DNA of 63,945 nt, the filler included, from Octopus bimaculoides (taxonomy: Eukaryota), in assembly GCF_001194135.2 (NCBI RefSeq). It is 8 parts of 7 records of this genome, joined end to end, with 100 filler letters (N's around TTAATTAATTAA, not from the genome) between each part and the next. Parts side by side here need not be neighbours in the genome. Positions count along the whole stretch, not along the records: positions 1 to 16,155 come from NC_068983.1; 7 more parts are not named here. One strand, given 5' to 3'. The notes under the pieces are model-generated. The model ran no database searches, had not been told where the DNA came from, and worked only from the letters and a program-made list of their open reading frames with translations. Below, one piece after another: positions 14,706 to 16,155 of this stretch; position 1 is the stretch's first letter; each line of letters begins with the position of its first letter. The position numbers and the translations under genes were made by a program.

Positions 14706-16155
14706 AGAATAATAATCCTTTCTGCTAAAGGCACAAGGCCTCAATTTTAGGAGGGGTGGAGAATAAAAATAATCCTTTCTGTTAAAGGCACAAGGACGGA
14801 ATTTTTTGGGAGGCGAGAGAGAATAATAATAATTCTTTATGCTAAAGGCATAAGGCCTCAAATTTGGGTGTTGGGGAGAATCATAATAATCCTTTCTGCT
14901 AAAGGCACCAGGCCTGAAAGTTAGTAGCGGTCTGGAAAAATAATAATCTTTTCTGCTAAAGGCACAAGTCTGAATTTTTTTGGGGGGGAGAGAGAATAAT
15001 AATAATCCTTTCTGCTAAAGGCACGATGCCTGAAATTATCTTGGGAGTGGAAAGAGAATAATAATAATCGTTTCTGCTAAAGGCACAAGGCCTGAAATTT
15101 GGGGGTGGGGGAAAATAATAATAATCGTTTCTGTTACAGGCACAAGGCCAGAAATTTGGCAGTGGGGCGAATAATAATCCTTTCTTCTGAAGGCACAAGG
15201 CTTGATATTTAGCAGGGGAAGAATAATAATACTCTATTCTGTTAAAGGCACAAGTCCTGCAATTTTTTGGGTGGGGAGAGAGAATAATAATAATTCTTTC
15301 TGCTAAAGGCACAAGGCCTGAAATTTGGGAGGGAGAGAATAATAATAATCCTTTCTGTTAAAGGCAAAAGGCCTGAAATTTTTTGGGGGAGAGAATAATA
15401 ATAATCCTTTCTGCGAAAGGCACAATGCCTGAAATTTAGGGTGGGGGGGAGAATAATAGTAATCCTTTCTGCTAAAGGCACAAGACCTGGAATTTGGGGG
15501 TGGGGTAGAATAATAATAATTGTTTCTGTTACAGGCACAAGGCCTGAAATTTGGGTTTGGGGAGAATGATAATAATCTTTTCTGTTAAAGACACAAGGAC
15601 TAAAATTTGGGAATGGGGAAAATAATAATAATCCATTCTGCTAAAGGCATAAGGTCTGAAATTTGGGGGTGGAGAAAATAATAATAATCCTTTCAGCTAA
15701 AGGCACAAGTCCTGAAATTTAGGAGGGGTGGAGAATAATAATCCTTTCTGTTAAAAACACAAGGGCTGAAATTTTTTCAGAAGGAGAGAGAATAATAATA
15801 ATCCTTCCTACTCGAGGCACAAGGCCTCAAATTTGGAAGGGGTGGAGAATAATAATAATCATTTCTGCTAAAGGCACAAGGCCAGAAATTATGGCGTGGG
15901 CGAGAATAATAATGATCCTATCTGCTAAAGGCACAAGGCCTGAAATTTGGGGGTGGGGGAGAATAGTAATAATCGTTTCGGCTAAAGGCACAAGGCCTGA
16001 AATTTTATGGGTGGGGAGAGAGAATAATAATTATCCTTGCTGCTAAAGGCACAAGGCCTGGAATTTGGGGGTGGGGTAAGGCCTGAAATTTGGGAGGGGT
16101 GGAGAATAATAATAATTCTTTCTGTTACAGGCACAAAGCCTGAAATTATTTTGGG
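14706..16155 (-). repeat. Tandem minisatellite of about 25 units of about 58 bp, derived from the SINE-B 3' tail
   Basis: Plus-strand unit AATAATAATAATCCTTTCTGCTAAAGGCACAAGGCCTGAAATTT plus a variable G-rich 10-18 nt segment. It is the reverse complement of the SINE-B tail (e.g. 34600-34640, 62300-62340). Truncated by a linker gap. Confidence 0.93.

What the first reader, a model, noticed from the sequence alone, without database searches (positions are those of the whole stretch)
14706..16155. CRISPR-looking array built from about 25 tandem copies of a SINE 3' tail
Seen: about 25 full units plus one partial, about 58 bp each, with a near-constant 44-nt block and a variable G-rich segment. On the minus strand each unit reads CCCCAAATTTCAGGCCTTGTGCCTTTAGCAGAAAGG(ATT)3-4, which is the last 50 nt or so of SINE-B plus its own short tail. 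One unit (about 15790-15835, CTACTCGAGGCAC) is one base from the dispersed SINE version CTACTCTAGGCAC. Established: SINE 3' tails carry the recognition site for a partner LINE reverse transcriptase. Inference: this is either a satellite born from one tail by slippage or unequal exchange, or repeated re-priming and template jumping by the RT that added tail units one after another. If transcribed, it would be a multivalent RT-binding RNA that could be mobilised or act as a decoy. Most units share GCTAAAGG, absent from the dispersed copies here, which favours amplification of a single founder. The array is cut by a linker, so its true length is unknown.
Basis: partly seen in the sequence, partly recalled or inferred. 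Interest (0 to 1): 0.75.

Follow-up and report, generated by a model that had tools for sequence, protein, structure and literature searches.

The report
Minisatellite made from a SINE tail
This is an old, decaying tandem array of at least 25 copies of the last 45 or so bases plus short tail of a SINE that is also scattered through the window; it looks like an ordinary transposon-derived minisatellite, not a CRISPR-like or reverse-transcriptase-run system.

Summary
Window 14698-16155 is a head-to-tail array with a 57-bp period: 25 units that carry the core, plus one internally deleted unit. It runs into the piece's edge, so its true length is unknown.

On the minus strand each unit reads C-rich stretch, then AAATTTCAGGCCTTGTGCCTTTAGCAGAAAGG, then (ATT)3-4. 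The consensus core is 84-87% identical to the 3' ends of three dispersed SINE copies in the same window.

Three results favour a single founder duplication amplified at the DNA level:
- Every unit shares the same tail-to-next-unit junction (ATT|CTC or a close variant) and the same short tail.
- The array ends in a 10-nt partial unit.
- 23 of 25 units carry a C that none of the four dispersed copies has.

The array is old. Unit cores differ from the consensus by 8.5% on average and units are about 75% identical pairwise. Neighbouring units are no more alike than distant ones. The small possible hairpin shows no covariation and folds no better than shuffled sequence.

I found no second array anywhere I could search.

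Verdict: a new member of a known kind (SINE- or TE-derived minisatellite), probably in a cephalopod genome. Interest is low.

The parts
14698..16155 (-). Tandem array with a 57-bp period. It holds 25 core-bearing units plus one internally deleted unit. Each unit on the minus strand is a C-rich stretch, AAATTTCAGGCCTTGTGCCTTTAGCAGAAAGG, then (ATT)3-4. It is cut by the piece's edge at 16155.
14698..14707 (-). Terminal partial unit CTCTCCCCAC. It follows the last ATT tail and equals the start of a unit. This gives the (X-Y)n-X layout expected of slippage or unequal exchange between short direct repeats.
   Evidence: read directly from the sequence
16077..16104 (-). Internally deleted unit. It keeps only the C-rich stretch and AAATTTCAGGCCTT; about 30 nt of core and tail are missing.
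   Evidence: (82-bp row)
15797..15840 (-). Unit 6. It has four clustered changes within 14 nt (CTCGAGTAGGAAGG), two of which match the dispersed copy at 2811-2823. This may be a gene-conversion patch or chance.
12420..12665 (+). Dispersed SINE copy, apparently full length, with a tRNA-like head and a tail GTTATTATTATCATTGTT(ATT)4. It serves as the reference for the source family.
12666..12812 (+). 5'-truncated SINE copy that starts exactly at the tail of the previous copy. Its tail region CTTTAGAAGAAAGGATTATT is the closest dispersed match to the array core.
2680..2858 (+). Dispersed SINE copy, truncated or decayed at its 5' end, with tail variant CTAGAGTAGAAGGGG.
2870..3135 (+). Dispersed SINE copy placed head-to-tail after the previous one. 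It is decayed and contains an N gap at 3019-3028.
14470..14697 (-). The sequence that directly abuts the array. It is the last 48 or so codons, the stop and a short A-rich 3' end of a 5'-truncated non-LTR retrotransposon copy ('C'). Confidence is moderate.
   Evidence: E 0.09 against copy B; E 0.002 against the intact relative in L007
12813..14460 (-). Two further 5'-truncated copies of the same non-LTR family in the same orientation: A at 14460 to 13640 and B at 13640 to 12813. B ends at the (ATT)n tail of the plus-strand SINE.
   Evidence: E 2e-18; E 2e-11

Best explanation
This is a minisatellite derived from a SINE 3' end.

Origin (inferred). One SINE copy, or one 5'-truncated copy inserted at another copy's tail, gave a short direct duplication. 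That duplication covered the last 45 or so nt, the C-rich stretch before it, and 3-4 ATT of tail.

Amplification (inferred). DNA-level processes then expanded this single founder unit to at least 25 copies. Candidates are replication slippage, unequal sister-chromatid or meiotic exchange, and gene conversion among units.

Decay (shown as a pattern, mechanism inferred). Turnover then stopped and the units have been decaying neutrally.

Shown:
- the tandem structure;
- the homology to the SINE tail;
- the shared junction, tail length and private base;
- the terminal partial unit;
- the divergence among units and the lack of any neighbour effect.

Inferred: the founder event, the amplification mechanism and the lack of function.
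For: 1. Structure and homology to the SINE tail.
2. Single founder from the junction. In the unit alignment the tail is followed by CTC in 18 of 25 units and by a close variant in the rest (TTC, CTA, CGC or CTT). The tail is 3-4 ATT in every unit, against 6-13 triplets in the four dispersed copies.
3. Single founder from a private base. At the AGCAG site 23 of 25 units carry C. The four dispersed copies carry T, T, A and T (and for the fourth).
4. The array ends in a 10-nt partial unit. Published models of minisatellite birth tie such a partial terminal unit or short flanking direct repeats to slippage (PMC3389668).
5. Age and absence of homogenisation:
- Core divergence from the consensus averages 8.5%, range 2.3-18%.
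- All-pairs identity is 0.753 and adjacent-pair identity is 0.742.
- The Mantel correlation of identity with distance along the array is r = 0.04.
- There are 41 shared variant states, scattered along the array as in ordinary variant-repeat maps.
6. No sign of selection on an RNA structure. About 83% of cells pair, the same as shuffles, with 0-1 compensated pairs. Fold energies have z-scores of +0.6 for one unit and +0.37 for 600 nt.
7. A precedent for the founder lies in the same window. Both SINE pairs are head-to-tail, and the copy at 12666-12812 is a 5'-truncated copy sitting exactly at the tail of 12420-12665.
8. The kind is known: SINE-derived satellites in squamates (PMC10702118), TE-derived minisatellites in humans (PMC3389668) and tandem SINE arrays in a bivalve (PMC11481361).
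Against: - One end of the array is missing, so flanking direct repeats cannot be checked at both ends. Whether a SINE body sits at the 5' end is unknown.
- Only four dispersed SINE copies were available. The 'private' base could belong to a SINE subfamily not present in this window.
- Neighbouring units are not more alike than distant ones. Stepwise unequal exchange alone would predict that they are. A burst of amplification, or much conversion between units, has to be assumed.
- Neither the genome-wide distribution nor transcription could be examined.
Confidence: 0.8

Rival explanations
1. A concatemer made by reverse transcriptase. During target-primed reverse transcription the enzyme copied the tail and about 45 nt of SINE RNA, then switched again and again to the 3' end of the same or another SINE RNA. 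Alternatively, many very short 5'-truncated copies inserted one after another into the previous copy's tail.
For: - SINE copies in this window do sit head-to-tail at each other's tails, and one of them is 5'-truncated.
- Two copies of a non-LTR element end exactly at SINE (ATT)n tails, so these tails are integration targets here.
- A 5'-truncated non-LTR copy abuts the array in the same orientation.
- Neighbouring units are no more alike than distant ones.
- Unit 6 partly resembles another SINE variant.
Against: - All units begin at the same position and share the same junction and a 3-4 ATT tail. Independent jumps or insertions should vary in all three.
- From established knowledge of R2-type enzymes, template jumping happens at the 5' end of a template, not 45 nt from its 3' end.
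- 23/25 units share a base that no dispersed copy here has.
- The only non-LTR family found in the window has a (TAA)n sense tail, not the SINE's (ATT)n, so it is not the SINE's tail partner.
Confidence: 0.07
2. One locus of a larger family. Either it is a dispersed SINE-derived satellite present at many sites, as in geckos and snakes, or it is the variable-repeat module of a composite mobile element that moves as a whole, as in the human SVA element.
For: - In squamates SINE-derived satellites often occur at many loci, usually with a longer terminal unit reaching a SINE terminus.
- The missing end of this array could hold such a unit.
- This reading is compatible with DNA-level amplification.
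Against: No second array was found where I could look:
- exact-pattern scans of metagenome and viral contigs gave only chance bacterial hits;
- peptide baits from the array found nothing related among 5.8 billion and 1.84 billion proteins.

These collections probably do not hold this genome's non-coding DNA, so the negative is weak. The high divergence between units also argues against a young, spreading family.
Confidence: 0.1
3. A functional transcribed array: a multivalent RNA that binds the partner reverse transcriptase as a decoy or mobilisable substrate, or a source of piRNAs against the SINE.
For: - The unit holds the part of a SINE that, by established knowledge, partner LINE enzymes recognise.
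- The window is dense with transposon fragments, many in one orientation, as in some piRNA clusters.
Against: - The units contain no pol III head.
- Some units contain T4-T5 runs.
- The candidate hairpin shows no covariation and no excess stability.
- The units decay at about the rate of the dispersed copies.
Confidence: 0.03

Closest known systems
SINE-derived satellites (sSats) of squamate reptiles (Vassetzky, Kosushkin and Ryskov 2023, PMC10702118)
   Same: Tandem arrays are built from a portion of a tRNA-derived SINE that is also dispersed in the genome. Short loci have poorly homogenised units. The proposed birth is by duplication followed by amplification.
   Different: - Most squamate sSats have a longer terminal unit reaching a SINE terminus. 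Here the visible end has only a 10-nt partial unit and the other end is cut off.
- Those are multi-locus and often subtelomeric. Here only one locus is known.
- The unit here includes the SINE's own microsatellite tail.
- The host here is probably a cephalopod.
Alu- and other TE-derived minisatellites in the human genome (Jurka and Gentles 2006; Ahmed and Liang 2012, PMC3389668)
   Same: A fragment of a SINE is repeated in tandem. Birth is attributed to slippage or unequal exchange between short direct repeats. A partial terminal unit is a hallmark. Expansion is slow and local.
   Different: Most human cases have 2-3 units, and a 17-unit Alu array is singled out as large. This one has at least 25. 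The source SINE has an (ATT)n tail rather than poly(A), and each unit keeps a piece of that tail.
Tandem SINE arrays in the blood clam Scapharca broughtonii (PMC11481361)
   Same: Both are in molluscs. Direct arrays of up to 15 SINE units are truncated at the same position and separated by the same short sequence, which is explained by unequal recombination.
   Different: The clam units are whole or near-whole SINEs of at least 150 bp. Here only the last 45 or so nt plus tail is repeated.
PcH-Sat of the limpet Patella caerulea, proposed to derive from a Nin-SINE (PMC11121367; title and abstract only)
   Same: A mollusc satellite traced to a SINE.
   Different: I did not read the paper's details. 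It concerns an abundant satellite isolated as such, not a single 1.5-kb locus.
CRISPR arrays
   Same: Only the look of a constant block alternating with a variable block.
   Different: - The variable blocks are 8-14 nt, C-rich and alike.
- The repeats are diverged.
- The context is eukaryotic, with SINEs, LINE remnants, a mariner remnant and microsatellites.
- There are no cas genes.

Membership tests
SINE-/TE-derived minisatellite or satellite | Head-to-tail tandem units, several copies | tested here: met
   Period 57, 24-26 copies, TRF score 1397; 25 cores parsed
SINE-/TE-derived minisatellite or satellite | The unit is homologous to part of a SINE that is dispersed in the same genome | tested here: met
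   The consensus core is 84-87% identical to three dispersed SINE tails in the window, and a 19-nt block is identical in two of them
SINE-/TE-derived minisatellite or satellite | Units descend from one founder duplication (shared junction and shared private variants) | tested here: met
   The ATT|CTC junction or a close variant is present in all units, the tail is 3-4 ATT in all, and 23/25 units carry a C that 0/4 dispersed copies have
SINE-/TE-derived minisatellite or satellite | A longer terminal unit extends to a SINE terminus (usual in squamate sSats) | tested here: inconclusive
   The visible end has only a 10-nt partial unit followed by a LINE remnant. The other end is cut by the piece's edge.
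SINE-/TE-derived minisatellite or satellite | Multiple loci or satellite-like abundance in the genome | not testable with these tools
   The source genome is not in any searchable collection. Scans and peptide baits found nothing related.
CRISPR array | Near-identical repeats separated by unique spacers of similar length (about 26-72 nt) | tested here: not met
   The variable stretches are 8-14 nt, C-rich and mutually similar. The repeats differ from the consensus by 8.5% on average.
CRISPR array | Prokaryotic or viral context with cas genes or a leader | tested here: not met
   The window holds tRNA-derived SINE copies, non-LTR retrotransposon remnants, a mariner remnant (PDB E 2e-16) and long microsatellites.
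Head-to-tail retrotransposon arrays made by successive reverse transcription (as at Drosophila telomeres or in Chlorella Zepp clusters; from my own knowledge) | Units have variable 5' truncation points and variable tails, each junction made independently | tested here: not met
   Unit start, tail length and junction are uniform.
Structured RNA element (LINE-recognition stem-loop kept under selection) | Base pairs are kept through compensatory changes and the fold is more stable than shuffles | tested here: not met
   There are 0-1 pairs with changes on both sides, and the paired fraction equals the shuffles. The z-scores are +0.6 and +0.37.

The most novel reading that the evidence does not exclude
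The array is one of many tail-only arrays in this genome. In this reading they are made when the SINE's partner reverse transcriptase stalls at the C-rich stretch and restarts on a tail, and they are transcribed into a multivalent RNA that soaks up that enzyme or feeds the piRNA pathway.
Probability: 0.04. Interest if true: 0.7.

Novelty: new member of a known kind. Interest (0 to 1): 0.2.

Why it matters
It matters only a little. Tandem arrays born from SINE fragments were surveyed systematically only in 2023, in squamates. Those authors left open whether such arrays occur elsewhere.

This locus is a clear example from what is probably a cephalopod genome. In it the repeated piece is the LINE-recognition end together with a slice of the microsatellite tail.

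The window also shows SINE copies and a (TAA)n-tailed LINE inserting at (ATT)n tails. That suggests a simple route from tail-targeted insertion to a founder duplication and then to a minisatellite. It is a hypothesis for a genome-wide survey, not a new mechanism.

Tried and rejected
There is no test of transcription, small RNAs or copy-number variation.
2. Exact-pattern scans.
- The 30-32-nt unit core gave 0 hits in metagenome and viral contigs.
- The 19-nt block shared with the SINE gave 6 metagenome hits, all chance matches in contigs of 50-58% GC with no surrounding similarity to the SINE.
- The same block gave 0 viral hits.
3. Peptide baits.
- Consensus-unit peptides in three frames found nothing.
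- The 118-aa open frame inside the array, run against 1.84 billion representatives, found only two unrelated repeat proteins.
4. Exact look-ups of five window ORFs, meant to find a longer contig: none is on record.
5. Rfam: only microsatellite false positives far below the gathering scores. ARAGORN found no tRNA.
6. Higher-order periodicity: none. Identity by lag is flat at 0.71-0.76.
7. A read-through of LINE copy B against the protein database at E<=1e-5 found nothing. The RT stretch of copy D2 against PDB also found nothing. D2 against the protein database did find a relative.
8. A literature search for the SINE's own sequence strings gave 0 papers. The cephalopod assignment therefore rests on my memory of the octopus SINE core and is unverified.
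9. An assembly artefact was rejected. The units are too diverged (about 75% pairwise) to be a collapsed or duplicated read pile.

Full report
**What is there.** Window 14698-16155 is a tandem array. Tandem Repeats Finder gives 14700-16076 with period 57, 24.1 copies, 77% matches, 6% indels and score 1397, plus a further row to 16147. Parsing the minus strand with a fuzzy core finds 25 units spaced 53-62 bp apart. A single 82-bp spacing holds an internally deleted unit at about 16077-16104. A 30-nt core matches 19 times with up to 3 mismatches, against 0.00 expected.

The consensus unit on the minus strand is CCCCCCCCAAATTTCAGGCCTTGTGCCTTTAGCAGAAAGGATTATTATTATTCTCCC. Core columns are about 70-99% conserved, and the C-rich stretch is 40-80% conserved. 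The array runs straight into the N linker, so 25 units is a lower bound.

**Where the unit comes from.** The window holds four dispersed copies of one SINE, all on the plus strand: 2680-2858, 2870-3135, 12420-12665 and 12666-12812. I judge it tRNA-derived from its box-like head, read by eye.
- The unit aligns to the last 45 or so nt of these copies, including the C-rich stretch that precedes AAATTTCAGG, and continues into the first ATT repeats of the tail.
- The array consensus core is 84%, 87% and 87% identical to three of the tails, and 63% identical to the most decayed one.
Unit 6 is one mismatch from 2811-2823. GCTAAAGG is in 14 of 25 units and in none of the dispersed SINE copies. The copy at 12759-12811 carries the close variant CTTTAGAAGAAAGG.
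- From memory, the SINE core (GAGGTCGACTTTGCCTTTCATC) is that of the abundant octopus SINE. I could not verify this, because no paper in the library holds the string.

**One founder or many events?** Four observations point to one founder.
- In the unit alignment the tail is followed by CTC in 18 of 25 units, and by a close variant in the rest (TTC, CTA, CGC or CTT). All units start at the same SINE position.
- Every unit has 3-4 ATT, whereas the dispersed copies have tails of 6-13 triplets.
- At the AGCAG site 23 of 25 units carry C, while the four dispersed copies carry T, T, A and T.
- The array ends, after its last tail, with CTCTCCCCAC, the first 10 nt of a unit, and then with unrelated sequence.

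That (X-Y)n-X layout and a partial terminal unit are the published hallmarks of minisatellite birth by slippage or unequal exchange between short direct repeats (PMC3389668). Independent template jumps or independent insertions would be expected to differ in truncation point, tail length and junction. None of these varies here.

**Age and dynamics.**
- Unit cores differ from the consensus by 8.5% on average, range 2.3-18%.
- All-pairs identity is 0.753 and adjacent-pair identity is 0.742.
- The Mantel correlation of identity with distance along the array is 0.04.
- No higher-order period is seen.
- There are 41 shared variant states, scattered along the array. For example, TTTAACAG occurs in units 7, 10, 14, 16 and 24, and CTGTAACAGAAAC in units 1, 11 and 18.

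So the array is old, is not being homogenised, and shows the mosaic of variant repeats that is usual in minisatellites. The lack of a neighbour effect means a burst of amplification, or much conversion between units, must be assumed. This is the weakest point of the simple model.

**Is there a conserved RNA element?** The unit can form a small hairpin, either CCUUU-AGCAG-AAAGG or the predicted minimum-energy variant.
- It is not more stable than shuffled sequence. The z-score is +0.6 for one unit and +0.37 for 600 nt of array.
- Across 24 units and three SINE tails, 83% of cells pair, the same as in shuffles, with 0 or 1 pairs changed on both sides.
- The units lack the SINE head that carries the pol III promoter.

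Nothing therefore supports a maintained RT-binding RNA.

**Surroundings.** On the minus strand the array is followed directly by three 5'-truncated copies of one non-LTR retrotransposon family in the same orientation:
- C, 14697 to about 14470;
- A, 14460 to 13640;
- B, 13640 to 12813.

Two more copies lie at 6900 to 6100 (D1) and 5600 to 3136 (D2). They are related to each other, with tblastx E-values from 5e-6 to 8e-4, and 0.09 for C.

A read-through of D2 matches a 409-aa protein, P0003, at E 1e-31. Copy B matches P0003 at 2e-18. Against the C-terminal end of the same element read from the L007 DNA, copy A matches at 2e-11 and copy C at 0.002.

In its own contig (L007) that element has clear RT motifs upstream and ends in (TAA)10. 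That 21-kb stretch holds eleven (AAT)n/(TAA)n arrays. So this LINE has a (TAA)n sense tail, not the SINE's (ATT)n, and it is not the SINE's tail partner.

Copies B and D2 both end exactly at the (ATT)n tail of a plus-strand SINE (12812 and 3136). That is what priming of a (UAA)n RNA tail on an ATT-3'OH would give; this is my inference. Both SINE pairs are head-to-tail, and the second copy of one pair is 5'-truncated.

Tails are thus integration targets here. A truncated copy landing at a tail is a plausible way to make the founder duplication. That step is inferred, not shown.

**Search for other arrays.** Nothing was found. Exact-pattern scans gave only chance bacterial hits. Peptide baits from the array gave nothing related. 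No window ORF is on record in the contig index. These collections probably do not contain this genome's non-coding DNA, so the negative is weak.

**Comparison with what is known.** Tandem arrays derived from SINE fragments are described in several groups:
- in squamates, with the birth-amplification-homogenisation model and the remark that their occurrence elsewhere is unknown (PMC10702118);
- in humans, where 23% of minisatellites are TE-derived (PMC3389668);
- as whole-SINE arrays in a bivalve (PMC11481361);
- by title, as a limpet satellite (PMC11121367).

This locus fits that kind. Its particulars are the probable cephalopod host, the large copy number for a single locus, and a unit that is the LINE-recognition end plus a slice of the tail. 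It fails the defining features of a CRISPR array and of RT-built head-to-tail arrays.

**Verdict.** The origin from a SINE tail is confirmed. DNA-level amplification of a single founder is the best explanation (confidence 0.8). The RT-driven and decoy readings are unsupported but not fully excluded. It is a new member of a known kind, and interest is low.

Noticed in passing
window 2680-2858|2870-3135 and 12420-12665|12666-12812 (+): Both SINE pairs in the window are head-to-tail. The second copy starts at or within 12 nt of the first copy's (ATT)n tail, and the copy at 12666 is 5'-truncated. This suggests the SINE integrates into (ATT)n tails.
   Followed up: partly
window 12237-12415 (+): A compound microsatellite, (CTT)20 followed by (ATT)40, lies directly 5' of the SINE that starts at 12420. 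This is as expected if that SINE inserted into an (ATT)n tract.
   Followed up: no
window 12813-14697, 6100-6900 and 3136-5600 (-): Five remnants of one non-LTR retrotransposon family all lie on the minus strand. Two of them (B and D2) end exactly at the (ATT)n tail of a plus-strand SINE (12812 and 3136). D2 carries an FIDDLKLF box and matches P0003 at E 1e-31.
   Followed up: partly
L007 (ENA ERZ25066843, contig ctg2823_93x_l) 1-21230: The contig that carries the intact relative of that LINE holds eleven (AAT)n/(TAA)n microsatellites of 15-110 copies in 21 kb, and the LINE copy ends in (TAA)10. The family appears to seed or target this microsatellite. The organism is unknown, and the window's SINE is absent from it.
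   Followed up: partly
window 10137-10905 (+): A decayed mariner-type transposase (HTH region and part of the catalytic domain) matches SETMAR and Mos1 structures at E 2e-16.
   Followed up: yes
window 15797-15840 (-): Array unit 6 has four changes clustered within 14 nt, while the rest of the unit is almost consensus. Two of the four match the dispersed SINE variant at 2811-2823. This may be a conversion patch from a dispersed copy.
   Followed up: partly
window 1264-2165 and 3019-3028: These are assembly gaps (runs of N). The second sits inside a poly-G run within a SINE copy. The first is flanked by (AC)n/(AT)n microsatellites that gave spurious microRNA-family hits in Rfam.
   Followed up: no
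window 14500-16155: GC skew turns strongly positive (+0.2 to +0.3) across the array, because each unit carries G runs on the plus strand. This strand asymmetry is typical of minisatellites.
   Followed up: no
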